From Klebsormidium nitens (lineage: Eukaryota; Plantae; Klebsormidiophyceae), in contig DF237441.1 of NCBI GenBank assembly GCA_000708835.1, positions 1 through 64,000 of the forward strand: a DNA stretch of 64,000 nucleotides. Direction: 5' to 3'. Position numbers and translations under genes: made by a program. Positions 928 through 64,000 of the stretch are shown here, piece after piece. Under the pieces are notes generated by a model. That model did not search any database. It was given only the letters and a program-made list of their open reading frames with translations, and was not told the DNA's origin. Position 1 is the first letter of the stretch, and each line of letters starts with the position of its first letter.

Positions 928-3900
928 ATGCCAAAGCACGGGCATGGGTTTGCTGAGCGACCAGCACAGTCTCCATTTGCTACAAGCTCATCCTGCTCTC
1001 TCAAAATGGATGATGGAAACATGAGCCCACAGCCTTCTGATCTGAAGCGCAAAGCCACCGCTGCGTATTCTCTCTCCAATGACGATAGGGACAGAAGGCC
1101 GCCAAAAGTGGCCAAGCTGATTGATCCCGCGGACAAGCATTCGACAATGTCAGATGTCATCGGCAGACAAGCAGTACCACCATTGCCATCGGAGCCCTTG
1201 CAAGGCTTTCAAGAAAGTGCTTTCCACGATTTCAGGGAAGCAGGAAAGGACACCACTCAATTTGCACCACCTTTGGAAAACAAGGCAGAGAAGGAATCTC
1301 TAGCTCTGCTCGAGCCTTCTACTGGCGAGTCTAGAGGAGAGACACCGGGCGAAATTGATGATGGAGGGGTGGTGCGAAAAGTTTTTAAAGAGGCAGCCGA
1401 GAGGGTGCATTCCACCGGAGGAAGTCATGATACAAACGGTGCAGCTTGCGCAGCTGATGCGGCGCCTTCGATGTGTGCACCAGAAGGGCAAACTTCCAAG
1501 GGCGTGCCTGACGGAACTAGAGAGGGGCTGGGATTGGCAGGACAGGCGGTGCCGGATCTTGCTGCTAAGGGGATGGACTTGGACAATAAGACGGCGAGCA
1601 AGGAGACTCAAATGCAGCGCGATGGGGCCCTGTGTGCGCACTTTTTAAAGAACCAATGCCGGTAAGCTTTTGGTGCGGTTGGTCTGGAAACAAGTATTCG
1701 TCCATGTTTGGAACTCAAGCCTGCACTTACTTATGTTGCCGACTTCTGGTGACGAAAGAACTGATTCTGAGATGTGATTGAGGATAGAACAGCACGGCAG
1801 CGTAATAAGGTTTGGGTTTCGCCTGCGTCTCCTGACATGACTTGGTTTCGTTGGAAATAGCTGATGCTTTGTGGAGGTAATCAGGCGCTGTATTATCGAT
1901 TGGACTCGGACCCTGTGAGGAAGGACATCTGTTCCCACTCTTAGCTGCATGCATTTGCTTGACAGCACTTGGTCCCTGATCGCTGAGATGCCAGTTGACG
2001 AATGGGATTACCAGGACCAAAAAGTGGGTCCTTCTGAACCAGGACGCTAAAACAGATGGCTAAACTCAATAACACCCGGCCATTCCCCATCTACCAGCTT
2101 CAGCCTTTTGCCCCTGCTTTACGTTCCTTGTGCATGTCCAGCTAGGGTCCATGTTCGCCCATAGCAGTAGGCTCAACGGTTGCTCGCCAGAAGGTATTTT
2201 CTGGCACCACCGCAGCTTTTCAAGTCTCGAACCTTTGTCGAGGAACTGGCAGCACTGCGACAATGTCTTCAGCATCCCAGAATGCTGATCACCTCTTCTT
2301 TTTCTCGCTTTTCAGCTTCGGCAACACTTGCAAGTTTTCTCACTCAGCGGGAGAGTCTGTGCGCCCTGATTCGAAGCACACCCTTGGGCCAGTCAATTCG
2401 AAGGGCAGTGACAGGTCCTCAATGAGCGCTGCGGAATTGGGTAAGAGCCGCAACTTTGATTGCCAATGCCACCCGTTTATTTCTGCAATTCCCGCTTGCG
2501 TACCAGGACTTTTGATCAGCCACCCCAACATTGCTATACTTTAGGACTTTCTGCTCATCGGAAGGTTTCTAATGAGACAAAAAGACCCTCAGAAAAGTGC
2601 GGTCTGACGCAATTCTCGTCTGGTGTCGTTTGTCCACCACACGAATGGTTCCCGTCCTCACCTCTCCTTATTGCAAACTAAAAGCGCTGGTACATTGTCC
2701 AGATTTGCCCTGTCTTTTGTCTTCACATGTTTCCAGAGCGGCAGAGAATGCGCCAAGCGTCCGTATGAGCACACACATGGAAAGGACGTCCGGTATTGAA
2801 TTGCAGCTTCAGGTGTCTTCTGAGCTAGTTCAGTTGTTGCCCTGAAAACATAATCTTCATAGGCGAGCAGCTTCATATGCATATGCTTCACCACCGCCGT
2901 GCGGTCCCTCCCCATGATCATACAGCAACATCACGATTCCATCCCTAGTTTTCATATCAAAATTTTCACAAAATGTCCAAGCCTTCGCTTGGCAGAAGCT
3001 TTTCCGAGCCCCCATCTATCTAAAACGGGCCGCCTCTTCCAAATTCCTTTCATTTTCCATGAGCTCTTTGAGGGCTCTTTTCAAAGTCTATTCTCTCACA
3101 TCTCTCAGCTGCCCAGTACGGCCTGCTCAACAAGTGCGTGATCAATGTTCCCAAGCACTGGCTGACTCCCGACTTCAAGGCGTTTGTCGACGCGCTCGGT
3201 GTCAAGTACCAGTCCCTCAAGAAGCAGAAGGGCGCGATTCTCGGATTCCTGACCTTTGAAACTGTTGCACAGTCCGACGCCGCAGCAGCGGTTCTGTTGA
3301 AACAAACGCTCAGGGGCAGTCACTTGAAGATCAGCGAAGCGCGGCCGAGAGCCTGGGAGTTGCGCGCGATGGCGCAGCCGGGGGGGCTGGTTCGAGGGGC
3401 AAAAAGACCCCCTGGACAGGAGGGAAATCAGAATAATCGGACGGATAGTAGGAAACGGTCGGAGAGAGGGTAGCGAGGAAGGGGGAAGGCGGAGGAGGGG
3501 CCGGCGTGAGAGTTGGAGGAGGGGGGATCGGGGGGGCAGGTTATGATGATGACATCAGGAAGGATATCCGGGACGCGGTGACCCCCTGGTGGCGGACGGA
3601 ATATGCGAAGCAGCTAGAGCAGAAGGAGGCGACGATCGGACAGCTGCTGAAACGCCTGGTAAGGAGGAGTGCACATTGTTTCTATACTTTGAGGATGCTT
3701 CCAAAACGCTCATTTACGAATCAATCAAGCCGGGTTCTGAAGTTCCAAAAGTGCACACAACAATGTTTCTGAGTCTTTTCTGAACACACCAGATTTACAG
3801 TTCTGCTAATTTGGACACTCAGAACCTATCGCCCGCAGTGGACATGCGTGTCCTACGCTCTCATTTTCAGGTTGTGGAGAGAAGCAACCTAGCTCTGCCT

Positions 3901-6900: not shown

Positions 6901-9900
6901 AGCAGTGTCTCATATAAACGACGGGCGAGTCTTTGGACGGAGAGTGTAGGCAGCTACGGCTTGATACAGAAGGAGGTTTCTCCCACATGCATTTCTGCAC
7001 ATGCAGACAAGCAGTGCAATCACCGAAGACTCTCCTCTTCGTCTTACTGCTGGAATTGGTAACAGTTCAAGTGCGAAGTTCCACACTTGACAAGCAGCGC
7101 AATCGTTTCAAGACTCTTTTGCTTGTTTCCTTACTGCGGTTACTGCTGATGGTTCCGGTGAGAAGTTTCACACTTATGAGCATGTAGACAAGCAGTGCAA
7201 TTGTCAAAGAAATTTGTTTTCTGCTTCTTACAGCAGGTACTGGTGATGATTCAAGTGAGCTCGAGGGACGCCCCCAGCGCCGACGCGCTGCAGTCAGAGT
7301 ACGGGCGGCTGACGGAAGCGATTTTCTCCGGAGCAGCTGCGCAAAGTCTGCCGTTAACGTATCTGGTAGTTCAGGTAGGCTCAGTTCTTCTTTTCTTTCT
7401 TTACCATTTGGGGACTCCGGCTTTCAGCGGCCAGGCATCGTCCCAGCAAACGTCATCGGACTGGTGTCAGAACGGATGGAAGGAGAACTGCCTTTGCCGG
7501 TGAACTCCCTGGTTACCCCCTGCATCTAAAACCCTGTGATCGACGGTCAGGTTTGGGGTTTTGCTCAAGTCAGAGCGTCGATCTGAAGAGGGTTATAGTG
7601 AGGAGGGGTCTCTAATGTCGGCTCGGGAGTTCATGTTCTGTCTCCATCCGGTCTGTCAGATGGGGTGTCGAATTCACAAGTGACATATGAATCGATAGGT
7701 TAGGTATAATAATCTCAAATTAGACAGGGTCGGGTGGGGTTAGTCAGGGGTTTTAGCGTGGGGAGGGGTTCGGAGCAGGTAAATGTTTGGGTTCCGGTTT
7801 TTGTTCGGTGTTGGGTTGGTCCCAAGACTTGGCTTGGATTCATCATGAACATACTAGAGAACCTTAGATGTTGGTAGACCGGTTAGGGCGGCTCAGAAAG
7901 TGAAGCCAGAGAAGGACCAGATTGTGGTGGTCCTGCCAACTAGGATGGGGCAGAGTTGATCTGCATCTTGCATATCAATGAAAAGCAAGTACTCTGCGCT
8001 GCTTGCTCCCTACTATAACTCAATGTCTCCTGTGTTATCTTTCAACGAAGGGCGAGAAAATTAGCCGGATTGATGTTCCAGACGCATTCCATTGTGTTTC
8101 TATCGAGCAGAAAAGGCGAATGACGTCAGTCAATTGAATTCGCAAGACCCACGTGCCAATCCACGTCACTTTCCAGGTGCACGAAGGCGTCTCCAACGCT
8201 GCCCCACCAGACGCTCCCCAGATCATTCTCGTGAACAACCGTACGGAATCCGGTGGGGTCTCAAATGGAACGGAAGCTTCGACCTCGAGTGACGCCGCGC
8301 ACATTTTCGAGCACATGTGCGGGCTCAAGTTCCGGCTCTCGCTATCGGCCTTCTTTCAGGTGGGCATTGTCTCGTGCTCCTCATAGCAATCTGCTTTTCA
8401 GAACTTTGGAGGTGTTTCTGAAGCAGCTTCGTTCGAGGGGCACTAACCAGATTGTCGGCCCTAGGACTCAAACCAGATACTGCCTGTAAATCCGGGGGGG
8501 TAATTTCAAACCCGGCTTCCACTTTTTCGGTCTTGTAGGCAGTGGGATGTTGCGTGTTTTGCCGATATGGCGACATTTTGATTGTACTTCTTGAGAGCGT
8601 CTGCTATTTCTCGACTTTCTCTCAGAGACTCTCGTTTTCAACGTTGTGTGTTAAGCTAGCCAGTTTACTCTATCCTGTTTTCATCCGCCATACTGAAATG
8701 TCTCCTGAAGTCGTCAAAGGACTTAAAGCTTAGGCCTTTGCGATATTCCAAATCAAAGTGTTGAAAGCCACGTTGGTTCATAGTCGAATAGTCGCGCCGC
8801 AAATGGGCAGCTTTACCAGCAGGGCAGCGTTCGGCGTGCCTCAACTCTGAACTGAAGTCATACATTTTGAAGCTCCTCAAAGCTCCAGACAGCAAAAACG
8901 CCGACTCTCAGATGTCGATTCCCAGTCGTTTCCCTGAGAAAGCTGTGCTGCCTTGCCGGCATGTCTCTGCGCCGCAGGTATTCGTTTTTTTAGTAGTTTA
9001 GGAGTGTCGTGCATACTTCTTAAGAGCTTTTACTCTCATTGTTCAAGGTAAACACCGCTGCGGCTGAGAAGCTCTACCGCCTCGCCGGCGACTGGGCGGG
9101 CCTCAACCGGCGAACCCTCCTCTTCGACGTTTGCTGCGGAACCGGAACGATCGGACTCACTCTTGCGGGGACCGTGGGCAAAGTCGTCGGGATCGAGATG
9201 ATTGCTCCGGCCGTCGAGGACGCACGGAAAAACGCGGAGCTGAACGGAATCCGGAACTGCGAGTTTGTGTGCGGGAAAGCGGAGGCGGTCCTCGGGAAGC
9301 TGCTGGCGCGATACGCGTCCCAGGTGGCGCCTGCTGACGCGGCGGCTGATGCGGCAGCCCGGGATGACGTCACAGACGGAGGAGAAGTGGGTGCTGACGT
9401 GGCGGCTAATGGTGGCCGCCAAGCGGCTACTACTGAGGTGGCGCCAGCAGAGGAAGCGCGGGGTTCGGCAATTGGGGCTGCGGATGAGGAGATCGGGGAA
9501 TTAATAAACGCTGACTTGGCAGCGAAGGGGCCAAGAAGTGATGACGTGGCGGCCAACGGGACTCCTGGGACGGACACGTCGGCCGCGAAGGAACGAGCAA
9601 CGCCGAGCGTGGCTTCGGGCCCGGAAGCACCAGCCGCCTCGCTTGAAGGGGTTTCGGAAAGACGAAAACGCGGAGATGACGTCAGCGGGGCAAGCGGCGC
9701 TGCGGTGGGGGCCTCTGGCGAGGACGTCAGTGGCGGGACCGGGTCGGCTTTGCGCGGGGAAGACGGAGAGGAGGCGCTATTCTCGGACGTCGTCGCAATC
9801 GTGGACCCGCCCCGCTGTGGGCTGCATCCGAACGTGAGTACAATGCTGCCTATTTTCTGGATTCCCTTGAGCGTCCTTCTTACAGCCGCAGCCAAAACTT

Positions 9901-41750: not shown

Positions 41751-44256
41751 TTGGCACACGGAAAGGTGTCGGTCCGCATCGCCGGGGTGCACTGGCATCG
41801 TCAGTAAATCCACGGAAACAGGTAACCAACTTCGCTGTCTGACGGGTTGTATTTAGATGGTTCAACGGAGTATCCAAATTAAACCCGAAGAACTTGCTGC
41901 GACGGACGGGAAAAGAAAGTTGCGAGTCGAGCCACAACTCTGAAGACTTGACGTTTGGTCCGTCCGACCGAGTAAAGTTTTTCTTCAGGCTTTCCAGTCA
42001 CTACAAAATCAGGGCAAAAGCTGCCAACGAGTCTCACATTTCAAAGGTAATGAAATCGAACCTAACATCTCCAAAACGCCACTTGAATAATGACCTGAAG
42101 AAAGGAAAAAGTCCGTTCCGGTCTCTATTGGGAGACAGAAGCAGCGAAGGCACGAGGTGGGTGATTATAATTGCAACATTCATAAGTCTTTTGTTTCCAA
42201 GCTCAACCTCTTTAAAAGCTACGTCGGACTTCCTGAACCATCTGAACGTACCGCAAACCCAGAACCTTTCAAACGTTCACCGACAAACAACAGTACGTCT
42301 CTCTCGTCTACATGAAGCGCCTGGCACGCGGAGCGCACGCAGTGCGCACAGTACTTCAACCGGCTGCGTTTCCACTAAGATACTGCAGGGAGATATACAG
42401 GCTGGGGAGCGGCCTAGGCGATCGTTCACACATATCCGCGGCTTTGGTTTCCGACAAGCCGGTGACGATCTCTGTTTGTTTCAGTAATGCAATCATTCAA
42501 ACTTGTACCATGTTTGCCTGTTGACGCGTCGAAGCTGTGCACGGACTGGCAAGTTTGAAGGCATCATGCCCCTCTCCTTCGGAAGGATTCCAGGTCCGCT
42601 TACCGCTCGTTTTAGAGCAGCGGCTGTAGAGCGCGCTTTCTATAGAGATGTGACGGCATCCCTGTTCTTTCACGACATAGAAAGAAGTCGACACGGAAGA
42701 AAGAAGAAAGACTTGTCGTCATTGCCAGGAACCGCTAGCTTCAAAGCAGCCCGAACACAGAGTGTATAAAAGCTTAATTCGGAACCCAGCCGACCCAGAT
42801 ATTACGGTAAGCAGGCTCTTTCCGAAAGGTACTAGCACAAGGCGACAATATGCAAGAGGATATGCAATATCCTGTAAGCATTGAAACCAGGCGTCCCGGA
42901 CCTGGATTTAACGATGCCCCAATTGGAAGCAGAAATAATTGTCGAATCTGAGAGCTCTACTTGCACGGGCTTTCCATGATGAGCTCCAGCCTGTACAGGT
43001 ATCAATGGTCCTATCATCCGGTTAGCCTCGTTAGACAATTTGCAGACAATCCGCCTTCCCGGCTTCACAATTGCATGTCAAATAGGAAGGCCGGGGAGCT
43101 GCGGTGCCTAGATTCTGCGCCTATGATCAAATAATTTGACCCCTGCACTGACATGAGGATGGTGTTGTCAACGGAATCTAATGCACGTTGCCGGCAGCTA
43201 GCTGGCCTTCCAGGCGGCGCTGCCGGGCGTACACCTGCTATAAACCGCAGTTTTGGAGGGCGAATAAGGTTTTCAAGGGTCTGGATGACTCGGGACTCAG
43301 AGGGCTCTTGTACGGGTTTCGGGAGGTCCGGGCAAGAATCCAAGTTCCGGAGAGAACGGCGTTGACATTCTAGCATCCAGTCGCAAATACAACCATAGTG
43401 CAGCGAAAAATGAGTGGGTAGCTTAGTCTCCAGCAGGCTGATCGTCCCCGGCCGGCATTGAACGGTTAGTTGTGTATACGAGTCACATCAAAGTGTGGAC
43501 ATTTAAGCCTATAGTAGTAGCAGCGCAGCGAGTCGGGCGCTGTGCGGCAAAATATGATTATTGCCACATCACCTTCAAGTTGACGAGACGACCTTGACTC
43601 CGGCTTTTTCTACTTGTTGCTGGATAAGGTCTTGTCATCCCTTTTGTGGGCTTATTCCTTGCATGTAACGTGGTACAAGTTAAGCGGGTAGTCGCACATC
43701 ATCAGATTTGCTGGTCACGTACTTACAGGTGAGCTGGTCTTGTCAAATAGCGCGCGTTCCTCGCTTCAAACAAACGTGCATGTTCCTTTCCTCTATGTCG
43801 AGCGCTTTTCGATCAGCCACCTTCGACCCTGAACAAGCTGCAAGCGTCAGAAGACAGCAGATTGTGTGCGGTATACCGTTCGAGCAGACCAGTGAAGCAC
43901 TCTCCCGAAGGCAATAGTTCCCAGCTTTCACGACAAAGTGACGTCTTTGCATAATTAGTAGCGTCCTGAAGCAGGCACTTTCATTCAGAACGAACCCAGT
44001 CATTCCAACTTGACGGTCTTCCAGCATAAACGCAGGGCAGTGGGGCATCTACTTCGCAAATTGCACGCCAGTTCCTTGTGGATCAAAGCTGCTGCTAAGA
44101 AGCCATATCGGACCCTGTCATAGGTGACGGCACGCCTTTCACAAGCCAAGCTTCTTCTAGAAGCACAGAGGCAAGAATAGACGTCACATCATTTCAGCAC
44201 ATTTTTGTTCCGTTGCTTCACTAGTTAGCGTGTGCAGTATTGACGAGCCCGACGTA

Positions 44257-45045
44257 ATGGCGACTCTCTATGTGGGTAACTTCGTTTTTGCTGGTGTGAG
44301 CGAGATTCACCTGCGGCGTGCCTTCCAGACCTTTGGGCCCCTGCGCTGCGTCCAGATGAAAAGAAACTATGCATTTGTAACATTTGCGGACGTGCGCGCA
44401 GCTCAAGAAGCAGTCCACGCCTACAGGGCGGGCCTTGTTTTGCACGGGGAGCAAATACTGGTCAGGTGGGTGCGGATGCACAATGCGCCCGGGGGAGGCC
44501 TCCGGGAGCTTCCCACGAGCTTCCAGACGGTCGCATACAACGACCGGGCCAGGCCCCATGGTTGTAAGCGCTTTACCGGCTGTAGAGATAGTTTACGGCA
44601 AGGGGCGCCTGCAGGAAGCTTTTGTACCATCTATGGCAGGGCGGGCCACTCGACCGCTGCCTGCCGCTACAACGTGAGGACCATAAGGGCCGGGGGCGTT
44701 GACATGGCACGCGCCAAATGCGCTTGGGATTCAGAGGTAGCGAAGCGCGGGGACGGAAACTTGGCGAGCGGCAGTGGAGCAAGGCTGGAGGGCGGAGTGG
44801 AGCCCAGACCGAACCTGAGGGGAAGGGGCTGTTCAGCAGGGAATGCGGGACTCGGTTCAAGGCAAACGTCTCCCAAAAAGATATTTGATTTGGATGAGCC
44901 TGATGCGAGGATGAAGCCGCCTTCTGGCGGGGATCGGAGGTCAGATTTTGTGGTGAACGGTGAGCTGATGCAGCGAGCGAGCGACTGGTTCAGAGGTTAC
45001 CAAAGGAGGGAGCCGAGTATGAGCAGGGCCATCCCCAGGAGGTAA
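44257..45045 (+). CDS. Intronless RRM protein with a degenerate CCHC zinc knuckle; RS2Z/RSZ SR-protein-like, probable retrocopy
   Basis: RNP2 LYVGNF and RNP1 region VQMKRNYAFVTF (compare VDMKRDYAFVEF of plant RS2Z). Knuckle CTIYGRAGHSTAAC has its second Cys replaced by Tyr. No introns and no RS-dipeptide tail. Confidence 0.7.
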   Translation: MATLYVGNFVFAGVSEIHLRRAFQTFGPLRCVQMKRNYAFVTFADVRAAQEAVHAYRAGLVLHGEQILVRWVRMHNAPGGGLRELPTSFQTVAYNDRARPHGCKRFTGCRDSLRQGAPAGSFCTIYGRAGHSTAACRYNVRTIRAGGVDMARAKCAWDSEVAKRGDGNLASGSGARLEGGVEPRPNLRGRGCSAGNAGLGSRQTSPKKIFDLDEPDARMKPPSGGDRRSDFVVNGELMQRASDWFRGYQRREPSMSRAIPRR

Positions 45046-53959: not shown

Positions 53960-54113
53960 GATGCGTTAAAAGAGTCCCCTGTGAATGGCATATTGCAGCG
54001 GCGCTAATGAGTCTTTTGGATCAGGTACCCTGTAACGATGCATTAAAAGAGTCCCCTGTGAATGGCATATTGCAGCGGCGCTAATGAGTCTTTTGGATCA
54101 GGTACCCTGTAAC
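53960..54113 (+). repeat. 77-bp tandem duplication (76/77 identical)
   Basis: GATGC(G/A)TTAAAAGAGTCCCCTGTGAATGGCATATTGCAGCGGCGCTAATGAGTCTTTTGGATCAGGTACCCTGTAAC at 53960 and 54037. Confidence 0.95.
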
Positions 54114-55961
54114 AACATTGAGTTGCCACAGTACTTGTCAGCCGGTGATCCTCTCCTTTGAGGCGCTAGGACTGGACCGCTGGCTTTCCTTGAGAGGCCT
54201 GATCTAGCCTACTCGATCCTTCAGCCTACCCGATCTTTTTGGTACTAATCGAAGGTGTCTCGTTTGTGTTTGCAGTTGTTGCCTTGTTGCGAGCGTGTGC
54301 CTTGGCTGGTGGGACGGTGCTGGACTAAGCCATGAATTCCTCTTTTAAGCCCCAATCTGGCCACCACGCATTCGCACTATTGAGCAGAAGGTAAAAGAAG
54401 GCGTTCCAGTCCTTCAGACGACAGGCTTGCTTGTAGGCGGGCTTGCGCTTGCAGCCCGGTTGGTCAGGTCAACATTAGTGATAAGGACGCTGACTCCCCT
54501 CAATATGTTATTGAAGTGCATGTATATTTCTCCGTCTGAAATCTTAAACGTTTGAGTCAATGTAAGCTGTACCGTGCATTGATAGTTGTGTGCGTATGGT
54601 AAGCAAACCACGTCGGGTTGCCTGATCGGTTTTATCGTGAGGCTTTACTTTTGCTAGGCTGAGAGATTCGCGCTTAGTACTGCGCAATTGTGCATAGGCT
54701 ACATGGGTTGTTGATTCGATCGGTCGGATTAGCGAATAAAATACTCAATTGATGCCAGTGTCGTACAACTTTGCGGGATCGTGCTATGCCTATGAAACTA
54801 ACGGTGATGCTTTGCATAAGCCCACCGGCGTGCCAGCGCGGCAGCCGGCGCTTCCGTGCGCGTGGGCGCAGCCAACGTAATTTACTGTAATACCACTGCG
54901 ATGTTGCTCGAGTCGGATCGGATCATGGCATCGGAATGATTGAATGATAATCGTTGAACCAGGCTAAGTTTCCATGGCATTTGATCTATAGCAGCTCATT
55001 CAATTACCTTCATGCACCCCAACTTAATTCACCTCCTAGAAATCTAGGTAGACTCAGTCCATTTACTTAAGGATAGATTTACTTAACATATATATGTATT
55101 CCTGAATATAATGTTGTTATAAGTACGGACAAAGAACTTTCATGATGTGATTCCGCGGTTCCACACATCCGATCAGATACAAATTAAGCAGCCGGTACCT
55201 GACTCCGTTGATCGGATTGATATCCTAAGTTTGAAAAAAGCTAAACCAATTGGCCGCGTTACTTCTGTCAATAAGTCGTATACGTTGTGGCATGCGTGCG
55301 CCGCACTGTCTCGGAGTGGAGTATGCTTCGTATATTTTGAATACAAGTAATCTACGATGCACCCTCAATCGATCCGAGGCTCTACTACGCACTACGTGCA
55401 TACGGTACATCTAAATAATATATATTATCATAACCACGGATGGAGGACTTTTCGTGATATCATGTAATCGGTTCAACCGCACATGCTTCCATCATATTTA
55501 CCAATTAATTATAAGAATTGTCATCATACATAACCAGGGACGCGTAGTTTACAAATGTGCCAACTATGCCATGATCACAAATGCCGATATTGTTCTCTTC
55601 AATCGAAATACCAAACATATTTGGAACAGGATGATGGAGCACGCGCTGATCATCGCCGTGCAAAGAAAAGGGAAGCTTATTTCTATCATATTGCATTCGT
55701 GGACACGTTATCAGCTTCGAAGCACTGGCGGTTCATTGCCAAGGCACAAATCTTGTCTTGTACGATCCTTATAAGCATTACGCAAGTCTACAAAACCCTA
55801 AAAGCAAAAAAATCACATACACTCAGAATTGTGTTCTGCAGGACATCATTTACAGCTCACCGCGCCATCTCCAAATCCGCGTCCTCTAAGCGACTTTTGG
55901 ACATCAGGCGCCTATAACCTAAACACATTCGAACCCGACTGTGTACCAATGAAACATCTAC

Positions 55962-58900
55962 TTAAACAACGACTCTACCCCCTCTTCTGCCGCGCGGCTT
56001 GTAATCGATGGCAGCCGCCGCAATCTCATGCTCCGCGCGCTCCCCCAGCAAGGCCTGGTCCTCGAGACGCTTCCGTTTCCACTCCCGTTCAGCCTCTGTC
56101 AGCATTAAGCCGTTGTCGGTTTCCGAGGTGTCCCTCTCCTCCCGCCGCCGCCACGCAATCCGGGCCAGCTGCTCGCTCGTGCCGTGATCGGTCGCCTCTA
56201 GTGGGGCACCATTGGCGACCTGCAACGCCTGCATGTGCAGCGAACGACCGTGGTCCTGCAAGCCAGGGAAGGCCGTCCGGATGACCGCCTCGGCGAAGAA
56301 CACCTCCTCGGCAGGGGTGTTGAACTGGACGACGACGGGCAGGATTCGGGACACCATGGAGGCCTTCCAGAGGTTGTTTCGGGCGAGGAACTTTTCCGCC
56401 AGCTCCGGATTGTAGTTGGTCTGGAGCATGACCAACTCGTCCGGAATCTCGAAGTCCTGCCAGAAACCCCGCCCCATGTCTCCCAGCCCCCGCACTGGCA
56501 CGGGACCGTACGTGTCCCGGCCCTCCTTTTTGTTGAGGAAGCGCGGCACCATCTCGTCGTCGTCCGCTTCCAAATCCACCGACTTGGCGTCATCTTCGGA
56601 CTCGTAGTCCGATTCCAACCTTTCCCCGTTGTCCCCTTCCCCGTCGTCCGCCTCCTCCTCCTCCAATGACCCGCTTTTTTGCGCTCTCTTCTCCTTTCTC
56701 CGGCTCGCTTGCGTTTCGCCCGCCTTCCTCGGAGTCCCTCTGCTCAGCCGCCAGTGGGTCGGCGCCATTCAGCGTGTCGGCCAAGATCCGGATGAAGCTT
56801 CTCCTGAGCTCCAGATGAGCGCCTCCGGTAGCCTCGCACTGGTACACCGCCCTTTGCATAGTCTCTTCCAACGGCAGCTCCTTCCAAAGTGCCGTCCGCA
56901 CGACCACCTTGGCGAGCTCGTCGGGCGTTCTGCCGGTCATAAACATCTCCCCAGGCTGGACGACTAGCTGCGGAGCAGCTGCGGCCACCGTGATCGCCCC
57001 ACTCGAGCTTGAAGCCGCGCCTGCCGCGGGCCCTCCATCTAGGAGCGCACCTTCGTACCCAATCGCCCGAAGCAGGTTGGGGTCCGGCCGCGCGCCCGTC
57101 GGCCTTTCCCGCCAATGGAAGACCTCCCTTCAGCTCGAACCCATCAAACTCCGGCTCCCCTTTCTCCCGGTCCCTTCCGCCCAGCCGCTTTGCATCCCGG
57201 GTGAAGCGGTACAGTGTTAGAACGTGGGAGTTGGTGCCGGTGGCGTACTTCAGCTGCGTTGCCGAATAGTACGGCCCTAACCCCTCTAACACAAACACCG
57301 GGAGCTTTCTCAGCATGGCTACCACCGTCTCCACCTCCATCTCTTGATGCGCCGCTTCACTGAGCCCCTCATTGGACCACTGCTTCCTCTGCGTCTTCCA
57401 GTCGATGACGTGCAAGGGTGGGGAGACCCACTCCTCTTGTTCCATCCGGGCATTGAGGACGTACAGAATTGCGTCTTCGAGGAACGCAGTCCGCCCCTCC
57501 TGCCCCGCTCCCCATCTCGAATCCGCTGGCGCCCCGTTCAAAACCCCCTGCCCCCGTCTCGCCGTCCCCTTCAAGAACAGCTCGTGGATGTTTCTTAGCC
57601 GAAGCCTCCACCTGTCCCCGTCGTCCTCACCTCCAGCTGCGGCAAGGAAGTAAACGCAGATTTCAGAATCGTGAACCCGCACGCATCATTTCAAACAAAC
57701 GAGCTAAAGAGTCGAAATTTGATATGCCCCGCTTTGGCTAGGGTACCCGCAATATGGGCCTGAAACGTCAATATTCTTGTCATGTTGGAAACATGCGATT
57801 CGGGAGAACGAGGTGCTGCAGAATACTACCATCACGCCATTGCTTTTACAACATGTTAAAGACTTTGAGTGTTGGCTGATGCTTGGACCGGTAGAACGCC
57901 ATCTTCCAACGTTTCAGACACTTGCATCCAATGGGCATACGTTGAAAGGTACCTGAGCGGATGGCCTTTCGCCGCGGGCCTTCCAAAAAGTCAACCATAA
58001 CGCCGATGGCCACTCGGCCATCCGGGGTTAGCTCTCCCTGCCACGCCCGCCGCCACGCGCTGTACAGCTGGCTGTATACTGAGCTGCCGTCCAGATCCGC
58101 TGCATTAGCGGCTAGCGTCGCGGAGACGTCGATCTTGACATTGAAGAACTCGGGGGGAGGCGCAGAATCTACAAAGTTACCAAACAGAATCGTTTTATGT
58201 ATATGATGCTCGCGGCATTACTCATTGCTACATTTGGATATGGCATAAGCAGCGCGACTCGGAGAAGGAGTTCTGTTCGAGATAAAGCACATGAATGAAA
58301 CGAAAGGATGCCGTTAGATGCGTCAATAATATCAATATTGTTTAAGTATTTAATGCAGTTGCCTGTCTTGCTTGCCGGGTCTTTTATGATCCTACTGCAA
58401 ATGTGCCGACAAAGAAAGTCTGCCCATGCACAACACAATACAAAAACGTGTATGACAAGATCGGGACAAGATCGTTCTTTTCGAAACCAGCAGTTTAACA
58501 AACTAATACTCAATCGAAACAAACAAAGCAGACGCACCACTAACTCCCCCAGCACCACCAGTTTCTTTCTCGTGAGTGTCGCCACCTAGGCCCCGGCCAC
58601 CCGTCACCACATCTTCCGCCTTAGCGGGCCCCGCCCCTTTTGTAGACCCCACTCGTGCACCTAATCTACTCGGATTCCCCTTGCCCCGCGCCATATTTGC
58701 CCCTTGCCCGAGATGCCACCACCTATTTGCCTTGCTTCCCCCGCTTGCTTCCCTCTCTCTTCTGCCGCCTTGAACGTTTCAGCCCCGCCTTGCGCTGCCT
58801 CTTGAGCGGCAGCGCGCTCCCGTTCCCTTGCCTCTCTCTCCTCCCGCTCGATCTGCTTCGGCGGCTTCCACCTTTCCGCGCCAGCAGGCAGATCAGGGTA

Positions 58901-61696
58901 GTACTCCCTCTTGTCGTAGGAGCGCCCGTGCTCCACCTCCCTCTGCAAAGGCATTCTGTTGTTGTCGTCGTCGCGGATCACGCGGATCCGGCGCGCTAGG
59001 TCCAAGTCCTTCGCCTGGAGGGTCCTGCGCTTGCCGTGCGCAACGCAGAAGATGGCGTCCCCAAAGAGGCCCACGGTAAAGTCTTGGCTCGCCTCCAAAA
59101 GTGCGTCTAGAGCGGACGACTGCCACCTGCAAGATTTTCAAAACAGATTAGGATGCTCGAGATTTGGATATCCCTCCGCCCGAACGATTTCCAAATGCAC
59201 ATTCTGTTACGCACTTTTGGAACTGGACCGTCCGATTGGAAGGACAGGTNNNNNNNNNNNNNNNNNNNNNNNNNNNNNNNNNNNNNNNNNNNNNNNNNNN
59301 NNNNNNNNNNNNNNNNNNNNNNNNNNNNNNNNNNNNNNNNNNNNNNNNNNNNNNNNNNNNNNNNNNNNNNNNNNNNNNNNNNNNNNNNNNNNNNNNNNNN
59401 NNNNNNNNNNNNNNNNNNNNNNNNNNNNNNNNNNNNNNNNNNNNNNNNNNNNNNNNNNNNNNNNNNNNNNNNNNNNNNNNNNNNNNNNNNNNNNNNNNNN
59501 NNNNNNNNNNNNNNNNNNNNNNNNNNNNNNNNNNNNNNNNNNNNNNNNNNNNNNNNNNNNNNNNNNNNNNNNNNNNNNNNNNNNNNNNNNNNNNNNNNNN
59601 NNNNNNNNNNNNNNNNNNNNNNNNNNNNNNNNNNNNNNNNNNNNNNNNNNNNNNNNNNNNNNNNNNNNNNNNNNNNNNNNNNNNNNNNNNNNNNNNNNTT
59701 CTGTTACGCACTTTTGGAACTGGACCGTCCGATTGGAAGGACAGGTGTAGAAGCACATATGATTCCGGGAGTTGGTTATTTCTACCAGTGCAAAGAGACC
59801 CGCATACTTTTGCTGCGCAAATCATGCTAGTTGAGTTGCCGCTTCCTTCGGGAGATTGTTGCCCACATGATCAGAATGCTTGCATTTGCAACTTTGTTTA
59901 CCTGCCAGCTCAACGACAATGTGGGCAGCTCATTTCAAACACCAGATACCACAAATTCCTGCCCAAGTTGCTCGTTCCGACATGCTTGAAGCTCCACATC
60001 ACAGCCCAACGTAGTAATATCGAACAATAGACGTCAACTACTCGATTTCAACTGAGATGCTAACCTGCGGCCGTAGCTCTTTCCCCTCTTGTTCCACTCC
60101 GTGTCGCACAGCTCACGCACGAGCCGACCGAACGAGAGCCTGGGACGACAGGTTCCGTGCTCTTTTGGTACTTCCGGATCTCCCTGAGGGCTAGGGTGCC
60201 TGGCCTGTACCGATGCGGCTTCTTTGGATCACGCTTGGAGGTGGGAGCTGGACCTTCTGGCGCCTTGCGCTTGTTGCCTGCAAAACAAACAAAGTGCTTA
60301 TACTTTGCAACAAACCAATTGTATTAGGTTTACACAAGAGCCCACCATACTAAACTGAGACCATACACTAGTAGTTTAAACAAACAACCTAGCTGGAGCA
60401 GCTATGAAACCATTGCCTTGACCACCAATTGGCAGCTGGACCAAAAACGCCGCAAGTACCGTGTTTTAGGGACCCTCCGCTTGCAAACTAGGCCCAAGAC
60501 GCTCATGAAGTGATCAAATTGAGCTCAACCTTTACAGCCCATATACCACAAACTGCTTCTGCACTCTGTTTGGGAAACAACCAGCTCGTCAAGAATGCTC
60601 AAACCAAGTGCACTGAGCTGACAAAAAGATCCTCATGATCTTGCAGCTCAGCAAACATGCAGGTGCTTTGAACAAACCCATCATAGAACAAAGAAGGAGG
60701 TGGTCGTATTTTGGAATAAACCATATGCATTCCGATCAACATGAGCGCCCACCACTTTAAAACGAGAGTATGCACCATGTTCTGAATAAACTCCTAGCTG
60801 AAGTTGCTAAAGTACCAAAGCTTTGACGACAACTTGACAGCTGGTCTAAGAGGCGCCGAAGCATCATGTTCAAAGACAACCGGCGTGCATCTATCCCTAG
60901 GACGCTCATGAACCAGTAACATTTGAGCTCACATCTACAGCCCATTTACCATCAACCGCTCATGCAACCTGTTTGGGATACACTGAACCCGCTAGCTAGG
61001 ATGTTGTAACCAAGCGCATTGAGCTGACAAAGCGAGGCCTAGCAAATTCAAAAGCCAATACCTGCTGCCGCCTTCTTTGCCTCTGTCTCCCGTGCTGGTA
61101 GGCTTCTTGGTGCCTTGCTCTGGAACTTGTTCTTGCCCTTATCCCCTGCTTGCTGGCTGGCTCCTTCTGCTGCCTTCCCCTTGCTGTTTCCCCCAGTGGT
61201 GGCACTGCCGGGAATCCTTGGAGCACCGCTGCACCAGGCCTCAGCCTTCCCGTTGCCCCGAGCTTGGAAAAGGACTTTCTGTTAGCGCCCTTTTTCATTT
61301 GAGGCCCGGGGCAGCTTTGCTCGCTGCTTCGAATGCCGCTAGTGCGGCCGCCTGCCCCTTGGCGTGCTTCTCTGCCTTTCTAGCCTGCGCCGCTTTGTAA
61401 GCCGCGTGTTCTTCTTTGGTGACGTCGTCTGCAAGTGCAATCTGCTGCGCAAAAGTCAAGGGCTCTTGCTCCTCCTCTCCGGTGACTTCCGTAACTTCTT
61501 CAACATTCTGCAAGGGGATTGACATAAGAAGAGGTCCCTTTTCCAAGGGCGATCTCTTGCTATATGCGGCTGCCTCCAAATCCTCCGCTTCCTGCTGATT
61601 TAGATTTGCTTGCTCCGACAGAATGTTTGGATTCTCTAGCCCATTGACCTCTTCGTCTGGAATGTCATCGCTTGAAGACCGGACAACTGCTCTCAT
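55962..61696 (-). pseudogene. Giant histone H3/CENH3-fold gene, copy A (~1,100 aa when reconstructed; several frameshifts)
   Basis: Exons 61696-61062, 60277-60065, 59126-58538, 58168-57953 and 57636-55962, all GT-AG with matching phases 1, 2, 1, 1. H3 fold: [24 protein letters not shown]...[11 protein letters not shown]...RWQSSALDALLEASQDFTVGLFGDAIFCVAHGKRRTLQAKDLDLARRIR. Frame breaks near 61290, 60143, 58700, 57125 and 56664. Confidence 0.8.
59250..59698. other. Assembly gap (449 N) with an identical 48-bp sequence on both sides
   Basis: 59202-59249 equals 59699-59746 (TTCTGTTACGCACTTTTGGAACTGGACCGTCCGATTGGAAGGACAGGT). Confidence 0.95.
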
Positions 61697-62185
61697 TATC
61701 AAGCGCAGTGAAAGCAACGCCAATGTATGTTCGCGGCTGTTTTGAGCGCCTTCCAACTTTGAACTTCAGAAACCTACCATGCAAGCAACCTGAATTTTGG
61801 CCGTGCATGGGCCGAGTTTGAAAGTCAATTCAAGACACTTCGTAATTTGCGTTCGATTTCGATAGCTTGACAGGCTGCAGCGTAGGTGTAAAACCCACTA
61901 TTCGTCGACCTATGACCGGTTTCGATGTTGTGAGCCTTGAGTCGACCTATATAGGCTGCAGGAGCTATATCGTCGAAAATGAAGTAAAAGAGCGGGAGCG
62001 TGACATTCGCCAAGCGTGTGAGACCCTAAGCAAACCCTAATTTAATCGAACAATCCATTGCAAGCTAGTTCGTCAAAAGTCTGCCTTGAAACATAATTTT
62101 TCGTGGTCTCTTTCGCGGAGGGCGCCGCCTCCGATCAGCCGCAAGCTTCCAACGCTTCCTTCATTTGCAAAGGCCGTGCATCAGC
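61697..62185. promoter_or_regulatory. Candidate bidirectional promoter between the two H3-fold genes
   Basis: ~490 bp between divergent ATGs. Central palindrome CCTATATAGG (61946-55), telo-box AAACCCTAA (62032-40), E2F-like TTTCGCGG (62111-18). Confidence 0.45.
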
Positions 62186-64000
62186 ATGCGACCAAAATTG
62201 CAACGGGGCCACCAAGCGGAGAAGGTGGCCGCAGCAGAGGATGAGGTTGGTAACTTGGAGAACCCGGGGGGAGCGCAAGTCCCGAGGGGGTCCGAACCTA
62301 CAATCGACATACTAGAGCTAGACGAGTTTGGCCTTCATGCTAACTGGGGACTAGAGGGTTATCTGTCATACGTGGAAACCCTTGCTACGCAAAACAAGTG
62401 GTCCCCAGAGAAAAAAACGGAGGCGGAAGCTCATTTTCTAGCACAATTTGCAGAGCTTCGAAGCGGGGAGCAATCTACTCCGCCAGAGACCATGCAGACA
62501 GAGGAACGGGCTCCGGAAGAAGTCCGAAAGGAGCGGCGCATTATGAGCTCAGAAGAATAACGGGCTCAGATTGACGACATTGCACGGAACAATGCTCCAT
62601 TTGAGAACCCCCTCGGTCACTGAGAACCTGAGGAAGACGATCCTCAGAAAAGCGGACACTTGAATGCGGCGGGGGAAGACGATCCCGATGCGCCCACCGA
62701 ATCGGAGCTGCAAGCCGAAATGACGTTCAAGCAACATGCACGAGGGGAGGAAGCGCCCGCAGAGGATGAAGAGGAAGAAGAAGGGGGGGAGCTGCAGTCG
62801 ATGTTGGGAGATCCTGGTCGGGATATGGACCCAGCAGAGCAGCACAGGAGGCACAAGGCAGCAGTAGCAAGCTTTCGAAAGACCTCGAGAGAACTTGTGA
62901 CGGCCGGCAAGCAGCCTCGAAAGAAGCCGCAAAGCAAAGCAACAGGTCGAAAGCCATCAAGCGTCTGGGCCGTGGTGGGGGCCTGGTGGGGGGCAAGAAG
63001 CCGGTGGCTGAGGCGGTGGCGCTTGCAGGCAAGCCGGAGGCAGCAGGGGCCACGGGGCAGAAAAGCTCAGGGGGTGCCCAAAAAAAGAAAGTAGCACCGA
63101 CGGGCGCCATTGGGAAGCCGGCAGCTGGGGAGGGGAAGCAAAAGCTCGCGATGGGAGGCAGTGGAAAGGCGGTGGTTGGAGGCAACCGGAAAACATTGGC
63201 GGCGCTCAGGCGCTGGGAGTCCGCGAAGAGGCCGCGGCGGTACAAGCCGGGCACCGTAGCGCTCAGAGAAATTAGGAAGTACCAGAAGAGCACGGACAAC
63301 CTTATTCCACGAAGCACATTCGCCCGGATCGTGAAGCGCCTGTGCAACACGTGAGTCGAAACGAGAAGACCTCATGTAAGTTTTTTGATGATGTGGGCGG
63401 TCGTTTTTTTGGACTGAAAAGCTTTCTCCATGAAGTTTAATGGTTTTGAAAGCATGCGGTCTGCTTTGCTCTGGGCCCAATGATCCGATCCGGCAGCCAG
63501 CTTTCCGAAAGTGATTACTCGGACAAGACTGCGGCCGGGCCATCTCCGAAAGTAGGCGGATCATTGTGATTTTGGATTTCATGAGTGAGAACCTCTGCAA
63601 CACTCGAGCCGTGGACCGGCTATTTTCCGAAAGCGGGTACATTGGCGGGGTTCCGGACATCATGCGGGAGATGAACTGGTCAATGTTCGAGCTTTGCACT
63701 GATGTCTTGATGACTATCTTGCAGGTGGCAGGCGTCGGCGTTGGGGGCCTTGTTGGAGGCAAGTCAGGACTTTGTCGTAGGGCTGTTTGGTGACGCGATC
63801 TTCTGCCAGGCGCACGGCNNNNNNNNNNNNNNNNNNNNTTCTGCCAGGCACACGGAAACCGGAAGACTCTGATGAAAAAAGAACCGCACCTGGCGAAACG
63901 GAATCGAGGCATCCGTAATGAGGACAACAAACTCCCACTGCAAGAGGCTGTAGAGCACGTCGTGGACCGACGTGATACCAGGGTCTATGACCCGGACCCA
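62186..64000 (+). pseudogene. Giant histone H3/CENH3-fold gene, copy B (runs off the window end)
   Basis: Acidic N-terminal region with in-frame TAA (62558) and TGA (62621), then GKQPRK and a frameshift before ~62990. [42 protein letters not shown]; donor at 63351 or 63376; acceptor at 63724. Then WQASALGALLEASQDFVVGLFGDAIFCQAHG and, after the N gap, NRKTLMKKEPHLAKRNRGIRNEDNKLPLQEAVEH. Confidence 0.85.
63819..63838. other. 20-N gap whose flanks overlap imperfectly
   Basis: Left TTCTGCCAGGCGCACGGC versus right TTCTGCCAGGCACACGGA (16/18; both differences are synonymous third positions). Confidence 0.9.

What the first reader, a model, noticed from the sequence alone, without database searches (positions are those of the whole stretch)
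55962..61696. Giant histone: an H3/CENH3 fold embedded in a ~1,100-aa spliced protein
Five exons join with canonical GT-AG sites and matching phases into: ~210 aa acidic then Lys/Ala-rich N-terminus with H3-tail-like words (KAPR, KRKAP), the histone fold, and ~750 aa of further sequence. The last part includes apparently globular orphan blocks (FFNVKIDVSATL...AWRRAW; FLEDAILYVLNARM...; FWQDFEIPDELVML...). The alphaN segment matches plant H3.3 at 23/24 residues ([24 protein letters not shown]). The fold carries the substitutions used to recognise CENH3: Q68>G, F84>W, T107>A and a loop 1 six residues longer. C110, H113 and LARRIR of the H3-H3 interface are kept. H3 and CENH3 normally end a few residues after the fold and start at ARTK (absent here), so this would be an undescribed class of histone-fold fusion, possibly a nucleosome-incorporated effector or a chaperone/centromere decoy (inference). 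This copy has at least 5 frame breaks, so a functional version would be elsewhere or the breaks are assembly errors.
Basis: partly seen in the sequence, partly recalled or inferred. Interest (0 to 1): 0.85.

Follow-up and report, generated by a model that had tools for sequence, protein, structure and literature searches.

The report
Transposon-carried histone H3 fusion, decayed copy
This is a broken but still transcribed copy of a Klebsormidium gene family that joins a histone H3-like fold to a roughly 600-residue unknown module; the family nearly always sits beside a Plavaka transposase gene, so a jumping element probably carries its own histone.

Summary
Window 55962-61696 (minus strand; Klebsormidium nitens DF237441.1) is a five-exon gene. 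It encodes an acidic and basic N-terminus, an H3-like histone fold with the CENH3-type substitutions, and about 750 further residues. Spliced RNA contigs support all four GT-AG introns. The N gap lies inside intron 2, between two identical 48-nt flanks, and does not touch coding sequence.

This copy has about six frame breaks. GenBank already annotates it as 'histone H3' (877 aa). A paralog on DF237958.1 (806 aa) is open in every assembled exon.

In 8 of 9 loci, spanning three diverged subfamilies, the C-terminal-module gene is followed by a convergent Plavaka transposase gene. In 6 loci an H3 gene or H3 exons lie directly upstream. In the most distant subfamily that H3 is a separate, near-canonical gene with its own stop.

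The best reading is an accessory gene of a Plavaka DNA transposon that captured H3 and later fused it. The window copy has no transposase and is decaying. The fold evolved under purifying selection (dN/dS about 0.1). The C-terminal module matches no known family or fold.

A true centromeric role is neither shown nor excluded. First-stage notes flagged similar genes on other pieces of this genome (s1-305507, s1-334322, s1-326893).

The parts
61062..61696 (-). Exon 1: ATG at 61696, an acidic region of about 130 aa, then a Lys/Ala/Pro-rich basic tail. It is broken twice. The first break is the in-frame TGA at 61297-61295, which calls for a frame shift near 61306. The second is a shift at about 61225-61195.
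   Evidence: Three-frame translation and tblastn of P0031. An RNA contig of run X5 lacks 2 nt at 61306, which joins the acidic frame to the MKKGANRK frame. The donor is supported by the joint 60276>61061.
60278..61061 (-). Intron 1 (GT..AG).
   Evidence: Spliced contig in run X2, with 23 letters on the shorter side.
60065..60277 (-). Exon 2: end of the tail, alphaN ([24 protein letters not shown]), alpha1 and the start of the lengthened loop 1. There is a one-base frame break near 60141, between alphaN and alpha1.
   Evidence: Translations and Pfam Histone E 3e-06. A contig of run X3 and the paralog L002 carry one extra G behind 60141, which restores the frame. A contig of run X1 does not carry it.
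59127..60064 (-). Intron 2 (GT..AG). It holds the assembly gap 59250-59698, which lies between identical 48-nt flanks.
   Evidence: Joint 59124>60063 in runs X1 and X3, the 48-nt direct repeat, and the gap-free paralog aligning to both flanks.
58538..59126 (-). Exon 3: alpha2, loop 2 and alpha3 of the fold, then the conserved post-fold stretch (IRDDDNNRMPLQREVEH ... YYP ... ERWKPPKQIERE), then a Glu/Arg/Ala/Gly-rich low-complexity region. The fold frame stops at 58663-58661. The distal donor at 58538 needs another frame. An alternative GT donor at 58722 (the exon would end at 58723) keeps the fold frame open into exon 4.
   Evidence: Pfam Histone E 2.1e-13 and the frames. A 9-letter overhang in a run X1 contig joins 58538 to 58168. 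The annotators' model P0034 uses the proximal donor. The post-fold motif is shared with copies B and C and with subfamily 2.
58169..58537 (-). Intron 3 (GT..AG, 369 nt).
   Evidence: The loose end ACTAACTCC at 58169 equals the reverse complement of 58539-58547. Unspliced contigs also exist, for example run X2 58376-58538.
57953..58168 (-). Exon 4: the first conserved block of the C-terminal module (FFNVKIDVSATLAANAA ... AWRRAW ... VMVDFLEG). The open frame has no in-frame ATG upstream of the conserved block.
   Evidence: The block is homologous to P0011, P0022, L008 and L004. The joint 57636>57953 is seen in three runs.
57637..57952 (-). Intron 4 (GT..AG, 316 nt).
   Evidence: Spliced contigs in runs X1, X2 and X3.
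55962..57636 (-). Exon 5: the rest of the C-terminal module, about 555 codons, ending at the stop 55964-55962. It is read in three frames because of net one-base insertions near 57105 and near 56680.
   Evidence: The paralog's exon 5 (L002 9687-11333) is one open frame of 549 codons. There are 28 representative homologs of the last 268 aa. No Pfam family matches, and no fold matches.
55259..55961 (-). 3' flank still shared with the paralogous block on DF237958.1. Homology stops at 55259. In the paralog this is where an assembly gap and then the 3' end of the Plavaka transposase gene follow.
   Evidence: blastn of L002 against the contig. tblastx finds no Plavaka or KDZ similarity anywhere in DF237441.1.
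62165..64000 (+). Head-to-head paralog (copy B): acidic N-terminus, basic tail, alphaN and alpha1 at about 63226-63351, an intron, alpha2 from 63725, a 20-N gap at 63819-63838 between duplicated flanks, then alpha3 and the same post-fold motif. It runs past the window end. No C-terminal module was found in the assembled sequence downstream, part of which is a 1.4-kb gap.

Best explanation
Shown:
- The stretch is one member of a multi-copy gene family of Klebsormidium-type algae.
- Its product joins an acidic and basic N-terminus, an H3-like histone fold, a conserved post-fold motif, a charged low-complexity linker and an orphan, mostly helical module of about 600 aa.
- The orphan-module gene is part of a conserved unit in which a convergent Plavaka transposase gene follows it. 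An H3 gene or H3 exons lie directly upstream wherever the upstream flank is known, with one exception (L005).
- The unit recurs in three subfamilies that share only about 30-40% protein identity, and it sits in unrelated flanks.
- In the most distant subfamily the H3 is a separate, near-canonical gene with an ARTKQTARKS tail and its own stop codon.
- In the two other subfamilies the H3 frame runs on past alpha3. In this subfamily it is spliced to the module.

Conclusion from this: the gene is an accessory gene of a Plavaka-type (CACTA/EnSpm-related) DNA transposon that captured a histone H3 gene and later fused it to its older accessory module. The window copy sits in a duplicated block of about 14 kb that holds three H3-fold genes and no transposase. 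It has about six frame breaks but is still transcribed and spliced. It is a decaying, non-autonomous copy.

Inferred:
- The fold keeps the residues that canonical H3 uses to contact DNA and to form the H3-H3 four-helix bundle, and it has been under purifying selection. It probably still pairs with H4 and enters nucleosome-like particles, carrying the C-terminal module with it.
- The likely purpose is to set the chromatin state of the element or of its insertion sites, for example to escape silencing or to target particular chromatin. Other Plavaka elements carry chromatin-modifying accessory genes in the same way.
- What the orphan module does is unknown.
For: Family and fusion:
- There are 28 representative homologs of the last 268 aa, and the one that carries a source name is K. 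nitens.
- P0031 (806 aa) and P0034 (877 aa, this locus) combine PF00125 with the module.
- Spliced RNA contigs support all four introns, including the fold-to-module junction.
- Exon 4 has no in-frame ATG upstream of its conserved block.

Synteny with Plavaka:
- Precomputed PF18759 hits lie downstream and convergent in L002, L005, L007 and L008.
- I confirmed two of them directly, at 74.5 and 42.5 bits against a cut-off of 26.3.
- Homology to the Plavaka gene also follows the module gene in L004 and L006 and in L009 and L010.
- That makes 8 of 9 loci. The window locus is the exception.

H3 upstream:
- H3 exons or an H3 gene lie upstream in the window, L002, L004, L008, L006 and L009.
- In L006 and L009 it is a complete, near-canonical H3 with its own stop.

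Mobility:
- L004 and L008 are colinear through the H3, module and Plavaka genes at 70-79% nucleotide identity. Their upstream flanks are unrelated.

Selection between the two A copies:
- dN/dS is 0.09 for fold exon 2 and 0.14 for fold exon 3.
- It is 0.48 for exon 4 and 0.39 for exon 5.

Fold conservation:
- R69, R72, R83, K115, R116, T118, C110, H113 and LARRIR are kept.

Precedent:
- Giant Plavaka elements carry chromatin-related accessory genes (bioRxiv 10.1101/2025.02.11.637652).
- Plavaka occurs in streptophyte algae (PMC13519894).
Against: - No terminal inverted repeats or target-site duplications were found, so the limits of the mobile unit are not defined.
- The window locus itself has no transposase within 55 kb on one side or about 9 kb on the other.
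- The fold-to-module splice rests on a 9-letter overhang in one contig plus the annotators' gene models.
- In this copy the fold frame stops at 58661 if the distal donor is used.
- Two assembly gaps hide parts of the 'intact' paralog: its N-terminus and its post-fold linker.
- All RNA evidence comes from contigs that differ from the window by up to 5%, so some of it belongs to paralogs.
- Nothing here shows that the protein is made, binds H4 or enters chromatin.
- The subfamily-3 H3 keeps the K9 and K27 ARKS motifs, so a simple 'unmarkable histone' idea does not hold for the whole family.
Confidence: 0.7

Rival explanations
1. It is a host centromeric histone family. Under this reading the genes are true CENH3 paralogs with a lineage-specific C-terminal extension, and the Plavaka genes lie nearby only because centromeric regions are rich in transposons.
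For: The fold carries the three substitutions used to recognise CENH3 (Q68, F84W, T107A), a lengthened loop 1 and a non-H3 tail. Fungal CENH3 score about as well as canonical H3 against it. The loci lie on short, repeat-rich scaffolds.
Against: - There are many diverged and broken copies, not one or two conserved genes.
- The same gene order and orientation relative to the transposase is kept across three subfamilies and in unrelated flanks.
- The most distant subfamily carries a near-canonical H3 instead of a CENH3-like one.
- The tree gives no grouping with CENH3.
- I could not find out whether K. nitens has a separate conventional CENH3.
Confidence: 0.12
2. Fold and module are two separate genes that were wrongly joined. 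The H3-like gene would end at the 58661 stop, and exons 4-5 would belong to an independent downstream gene, as in the subfamily where H3 has its own stop.
For: The fold frame of this copy stops at 58663-58661, and an RNA contig identical to the window covers that stop. In L006 and L009 the H3 and the module are separate genes. Unspliced intron-3 contigs exist.
Against: - A run X1 contig joins 58538 to 58168 at a GT..AG intron.
- An alternative donor at 58722 keeps the frame open into exon 4.
- Exon 4 has no start codon before its conserved block, whereas the separate genes of subfamily 3 start with their own Met.
- In L008 and in copy B of L002 the fold frame runs on for 150-200 codons without a stop.
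Confidence: 0.1
3. It is a decayed canonical H3 pseudogene next to unrelated open frames, or an assembly or gene-model artefact.
For: The copy has several frame breaks, there are two gaps in the region, and the annotators' model dodges the breaks with extra introns.
Against: - The same architecture recurs in an independent scaffold and in assemblies of other samples.
- The fold has dN/dS of about 0.1.
- The module has 28 representative homologs.
- The introns are confirmed by RNA.
- The gap is an overlap artefact inside an intron.
Confidence: 0.03

Closest known systems
Plavaka accessory genes (PAG1-3 of red-algal giant Plavaka elements; TET/JBP genes of fungal Plavaka/KDZ elements)
   Same: The genes are carried next to a Plavaka transposase gene inside a large DNA transposon. 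They deal with chromatin or DNA modification, and most copies are degenerate (bioRxiv 10.1101/2025.02.11.637652; PMC12730594, listed).
   Different: Those cargoes are enzymes or DNA binders: an adenine methylase with a SET domain, a ParB-like domain with a 2OG oxygenase, and TET/JBP. Here the cargo is a core-histone fold plus an orphan module with no Pfam or fold match. The papers I read and the searches I ran turned up no histone cargo.
CENH3 / CENP-A
   Same: It is an H3-derived fold with Q68 lost, F84W, T107A, a longer loop 1 and a tail unlike that of H3. The four-helix-bundle residues are kept.
   Different: The family is multi-copy, linked to a transposon and often broken. It has a 600-750-aa C-terminal extension that CENH3 lacks, and an acidic N-terminal region. 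The tree does not place it with CENH3. Centromere localisation is untested.
macroH2A (from my own knowledge, not tested here)
   Same: It is a core-histone fold followed, through a basic or charged linker, by a large non-histone C-terminal domain, and it still enters nucleosomes.
   Different: macroH2A has an H2A fold and a macro domain, and it is a single-copy host gene. The case here is an H3 fold with an orphan module on a transposon.
VANC anti-silencing proteins of VANDAL transposons (cited)
   Same: It is a transposon-encoded accessory protein thought to act on the element's own chromatin state.
   Different: There is no sequence or fold relation, and VANC has no histone fold. The parallel is functional only, and it is inferred.

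Membership tests
Histone H3 superfamily (histone fold, PF00125) | Significant match to the core-histone profile over alphaN to alpha3 | tested here: met
   PF00125 matches at E 2.1e-13 (exon 3) and 3e-06 (exon 2), and at 2.3e-30 over profile positions 12-122 for P0031. The best solved relatives are H3.3 and H3.1 at E about 1e-30.
Histone H3 superfamily (histone fold, PF00125) | DNA-contact and H3-H3 interface residues kept (R69, R72, R83, K115, R116, T118, C110, H113, L126-R131) | tested here: met
   Read from the alignments. R63 is replaced (P, with R at 64).
Canonical H3 (H3.1/H3.3) | ARTKQTARKS tail with K4, K9, K27 and K36, and a length of about 136 aa ending shortly after alpha3 | tested here: not met
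   Subfamily 1 has no ARTK start and no ARKS motifs, and the protein runs on for about 750 aa. The transposon-linked H3 of subfamily 3 (L006, L009) does meet it.
CENH3 / CENP-A | Signature substitutions (Q68 lost, F84W, T107A/C/S) and a lengthened loop 1 | tested here: met
   G68, W84 and A107 are present. Loop 1 is 6 residues longer in the window copy and 7 longer in P0031.
CENH3 / CENP-A | Groups with known CENH3 rather than H3 in a fold phylogeny | tested here: inconclusive
   Copies A, B and C form one clade (100/100) on a long stem, unresolved against 6 canonical H3 and 10 fungal CENH3. The subfamily-3 H3 groups with canonical H3 (92/99). A single origin of all the transposon-linked folds is not rejected (p-AU 0.11). 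No plant CENH3 were available to include.
CENH3 / CENP-A | Low-copy essential host gene whose product marks centromeres | not testable with these tools
   The multi-copy, partly broken, transposase-linked state argues against it. Localisation needs an experiment.
Plavaka (CACTA/EnSpm-related) DNA transposon, accessory gene | Constant linkage and orientation to a Plavaka transposase gene (PF18759) across diverged copies | tested here: met
   Found in 8 of 9 loci. Pfam was re-run on two of the ORFs and gave 74.5 and 42.5 bits against a cut-off of 26.3.
Plavaka (CACTA/EnSpm-related) DNA transposon, accessory gene | Lies between the element's terminal inverted repeats, with target-site duplications at the ends | tested here: inconclusive
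   No terminal repeats were found in the sequence at hand. Scaffolds end or have gaps at the critical places.
Plavaka (CACTA/EnSpm-related) DNA transposon, accessory gene | This particular copy belongs to an element with a transposase | tested here: not met
   tblastx finds no Plavaka or KDZ similarity in the whole 70.5-kb contig. Homology to the paralogous block stops at 55259. The copy is therefore non-autonomous or rearranged.

The most novel reading that the evidence does not exclude
A lineage of Plavaka transposons encodes its own histone H3 variant. In some sublineages the variant has taken on CENH3-like features and is fused to a targeting or effector module. The element would then build its own kind of nucleosome on itself or at its landing sites. 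This could be a silencing-proof or centromere-like chromatin patch, possibly giving the element a home at centromeres or some influence over where they form.
Probability: 0.2. Interest if true: 0.9.

Novelty: new variant of a known kind. Interest (0 to 1): 0.62.

Why it matters
Transposons are known to carry readers, writers and erasers of chromatin marks. A transposon that carries a core histone itself, kept under purifying selection and fused to a conserved 600-aa module, would be a different strategy: it supplies the nucleosome rather than modifying it. The family also records the steps. In one subfamily H3 is a separate, near-canonical neighbour. In the others it is a diverged, CENH3-like, fused fold. 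That makes the case useful for two questions: how CENH3-like features arise, and whether they can arise outside centromere function. It is also a practical warning, because these genes are annotated as plain 'histone H3' in the public K. nitens proteome and could be mistaken for CENH3 in comparative surveys. The window copy itself is a decaying member. The interest lies in the family.

Tried and rejected
- Pfam on every exon piece, on P0031, P0022, P0011 and P0005, and on all 15 members of alignment A1 gave nothing but Histone.
- AlphaFold models were only moderately confident: pLDDT 61.6 for the module's first 411 aa and 60.6 for its last 182 aa.
- Foldseek against the PDB gave no hit with E below 0.001. 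VIA-align wide gave a best Z of 5.9, with short helical matches below the noise level stated by the tool.
- The ESM Atlas gave no usable feature hit, and its own model is poor. A second Atlas call failed because the machine was busy.
- The last two word-indexed protein searches, run with the fold, returned mostly mis-predicted tandem H3 models from animals and plants. They showed neither the K. nitens paralogs nor a conventional K. nitens CENH3.
- I tried to rebuild a paralog's exon 3 from the listed RNA differences to see whether it is open. Two of its nine differences were not listed, and the result still had stops, so it is uninformative.
- The search for terminal inverted repeats by self-comparison of 45-70.5 kb, and at the left edge shared by L004 and L008, found none.
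- I found no paper describing a transposon-borne histone or these Klebsormidium genes. This covers only the library that was searched.
- The idea that the tail is made 'unmarkable' to evade silencing was set aside as a general rule, because the subfamily-3 H3 keeps its ARKS motifs.
- The TTAGGGTTT motif in the shared promoter occurs 3 times in the window against 0.35 expected, but 3 of 100 shuffles reach that count. This is weak.

Full report
WHERE THE WINDOW COMES FROM

The window is Klebsormidium nitens NIES-2285, GenBank scaffold DF237441.1, bases 1-64000. Window coordinates equal record coordinates. I know this because the annotated protein P0034 maps to 55962-61696 of that record. The scaffold continues to 70517, and I read that part as locus L003.

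CHECKING THE OBSERVATION

On the minus strand there are five exons:
- 61696-61062
- 60277-60065
- 59126-58538
- 58168-57953
- 57636-55962

Pfam finds the core-histone profile in the exon-2 piece (E 3e-06) and the exon-3 piece (E 2.1e-13), and nothing else anywhere.

- The alphaN word differs from a canonical H3 at 1 of 24 residues.
- Residue 68 is G, 84 is W and 107 is A. C110, H113 and LARRIR are kept.
- Loop 1 is 6 residues longer here and 7 longer in the paralog.

I laid contigs of four public runs from two studies on 55810-61800. The contigs carry GT..AG joints, so they come from RNA:
- 57636>57953, in three runs.
- 59124>60063, in two runs.
- 60276>61061, in one run.
- For the critical intron 3, one contig ends at 58169 with nine further letters. 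These equal the reverse complement of 58539-58547, which is a 58538|58168 junction at a GT..AG intron.

The support for intron 3 is thin but specific.

THE ASSEMBLY GAP

The N run at 59250-59698 lies inside intron 2. Its two flanks are an identical 48-nt sequence. The paralogous scaffold has no gap there, and a single stretch of it aligns to both flanks. RNA contigs splice across the whole intron. The gap is an unmerged overlap and is irrelevant to the reading frame. The 20-N gap in the neighbouring gene (63819-63838) has duplicated flanks of the same kind.

STATE OF THIS COPY

Compared with the paralog, the copy needs frame changes at these places:
- about 61306-61295
- about 61225-61195
- about 60141
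- about 57105
- about 56680
- within exon 3, if the distal donor is used

The fold frame stops at 58663-58661.

The RNA contigs help in three places:
- A run X5 contig lacks 2 nt at 61306. That joins the acidic N-terminal frame to the basic tail, so the acidic region belongs to the protein.
- A run X3 contig and the paralog carry an extra G behind 60141. A run X1 contig does not, so that break is real and is expressed.
- Every contig over 57105 lacks one base, including contigs that otherwise differ from the window by 1-2 letters. That break may be an assembly error.

An alternative GT donor at 58722, used in the annotators' model, keeps the fold frame open into exon 4. Overall this is a transcribed, decaying copy.

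HOMOLOGS AND THE FUSION

A search of 1.84 billion representatives with the last 268 aa found 28 relatives. The only one that carries a source name is K. nitens GAQ92529.1. The rest come from unnamed assemblies.

A second search, with a long relative as query, returned two K. nitens proteins named 'histone H3' that carry PF00125:
- P0034 (877 aa) is the annotators' model of this very locus.
- P0031 (806 aa) lies on DF237958.1.

P0031 has a complete fold and a last exon of 549 open codons. Two gaps hide its N-terminus and its post-fold linker. So the architecture is in public annotation, but I found no paper on it.

Exon 4 has no in-frame ATG upstream of its conserved block. This fits a fusion rather than an independent gene.

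I fetched nine loci that encode family members. In eight of them the module gene is followed by a convergent Plavaka transposase gene:
- L002, L005, L007 and L008, by precomputed Pfam hits. I re-ran two myself and got 74.5 and 42.5 bits against a cut-off of 26.3.
- L004 and L006, by DNA homology to those genes.
- L009 and L010, by tblastx.

L005 also has a KDZ transposase gene on the other side.

An H3 gene or H3 exons lie directly upstream of the module in the window, L002, L004, L008, L006 and L009.

The three subfamilies share only about 25-40% identity in the module. L004 (K. nitens) and L008 (another sample) are colinear through the H3, module and Plavaka genes at 70-79% nucleotide identity. 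Their upstream flanks are unrelated: a MatE gene in one, a Tc1/mariner-type ORF in the other. This is what a mobile unit looks like, not a host locus.

The exception is the window. Its roughly 14-kb block (55259 to at least 69453) is colinear with DF237958.1 and holds three H3-fold genes. Homology stops at 55259, just where an assembly gap and then the transposase gene follow in the paralog. The whole 70.5-kb scaffold has no Plavaka or KDZ similarity.

HOW THE FUSION AROSE

In subfamily 3 (L006 and L009, two different samples) the upstream gene is a complete two-exon H3. It has an ARTKQTARKS tail and a stop right after alpha3. The module gene starts a few hundred bases later with its own Met.

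In subfamily 2 (L008) and subfamily 1 (the window; copies A and B of L002) the fold frame continues past alpha3. It runs through a shared motif with W-x-PPK and a Glu/Arg-rich stretch for 150-200 codons.

The likely order of events is this: the element captured an H3 gene next to an older accessory gene, and later the stop was lost and the two were spliced together. That ordering is inference.

SELECTION AND FOLD QUALITY

Between the two A copies:
- dN/dS is 0.09 for fold exon 2 (66 codons).
- It is 0.14 for fold exon 3 (62 codons).
- It is 0.48 for exon 4.
- It is 0.39 for exon 5 (536 codons).

One partner is a pseudogene, so these values overestimate the true ratio. The fold has been kept as a protein. 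The residues that canonical H3 uses for DNA contacts and for the four-helix bundle are present. From general knowledge, H3 tolerates C-terminal fusions such as GFP in nucleosomes, so a long C-terminal extension does not by itself exclude incorporation.

IS IT A CENH3?

The signature residues and the long loop 1 say yes. The rest does not:
- There are many copies, some broken, on a transposon.
- A near-canonical H3 sits in the same position in the sister subfamily.
- In a tree with 6 canonical H3 and 10 fungal CENH3, copies A, B and C form a clade (100/100) on a long stem with no resolved partner. The subfamily-3 H3 sits with canonical H3 (92/99), and subfamily 2 is a very long branch.
- A single origin of all the transposon-linked folds is not rejected (p-AU 0.11).

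The CENH3-like features may therefore be convergent results of fast divergence. I could not include plant CENH3, and I did not find the conventional K. nitens CENH3.

THE C-TERMINAL MODULE

The module matches no Pfam family. The models are mostly helical and of moderate confidence. There is no fold match above noise and no Atlas lead. Its best-conserved part is the last 180 aa, which has an invariant Trp and Glu and a GLG-x-MGRGFW-x-DF-x-IP block. Its function stays unknown.

MECHANISM I COMMIT TO

This is a Plavaka accessory protein that acts at the level of nucleosomes. The fold pairs with H4 and is deposited in chromatin, carrying the module. The purpose is to shape the chromatin of the element or of its target sites.

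Shown: the family, the fusion, the linkage to the transposase, and the constraint on the fold.
Inferred: H4 pairing, deposition and purpose.

Giant Plavaka elements of red algae and fungi carry chromatin-modifying accessory genes, which makes this reading plausible.

EARLIER NOTES OF THIS SCAN

First-stage notes on other pieces of this genome already pointed to CenH3-like genes beside a Plavaka transposase (s1-305507). Others pointed to clusters of long-tailed CENH3-like H3 variants (s1-334322, s1-326893). I reached the Plavaka link independently before I saw them.

LIMITS

- No element termini were found.
- The fold-to-module splice rests on a single short overhang.
- The RNA evidence comes from contigs only, and some of them belong to paralogs.
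- There are no protein-level data.

Noticed in passing
window 62165-64000 (+), continuing to about 64300 of the record: Head-to-head paralog (copy B) with the same acidic N-terminus, tail, fold intron and post-fold motif. Its alpha3 is degraded here (KEPHLAKRNRG, against KDLDLAKRIRG in the DF237958.1 copy). Its loop 1 is shorter than in canonical H3. A 20-N gap at 63819-63838 has duplicated flanks, so it is an overlap artefact.
   Followed up: partly
L003 2240-2798 (record about 67720-68276, minus strand), outside the window: A third H3-fold copy (C) in the same 14-kb block. It has an in-frame stop in loop 2 and a long acidic loop 1 (ETARRLGTDEDGKF).
   Followed up: partly
L006 5279-6141 and L009 573-1786: Complete two-exon, near-canonical H3 genes with an ARTKQTARKSTGGK tail and an altered K36 region. 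They sit between unrelated sequence and the module gene of Plavaka-linked units in two different samples. This is a transposon-linked H3 that is not CENH3-like.
   Followed up: partly
L005 1580-8559 (-): A 1453-aa KDZ-type transposase gene (PF18758) lies on the other side of the module gene P0014, which also has a Plavaka gene downstream. That puts two transposase-type genes in one 16.5-kb scaffold.
   Followed up: no
window exons 2-3 versus exon 5 (compared with L002): Synonymous divergence between the two A copies is about 0.30 in the fold exons but about 0.12 in exons 4-5. Intron 1 is only 70-77% identical, while the 3' half is 87% identical. This suggests gene conversion or a mosaic origin of the block.
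   Followed up: no
window 62032-62040 and 55793-55801; L004 about 7550-7590; L008 about 2980-3010: Telomere-repeat-like TTAGGGTTT words occur in the shared promoter between the head-to-head genes, in the 3' flank, and upstream of the subfamily-2 genes. There are 3 in the window against 0.35 expected, but 3 of 100 shuffles reach that count.
   Followed up: partly
window 53960-54113: A 77-nt unit repeated twice in tandem at 98.7% identity, just beyond the end of the duplicated block.
   Followed up: no
window 44230-45045 (+): An open frame with an RRM domain (PF00076, E 2.2e-07). It is unrelated to the finding.
   Followed up: no
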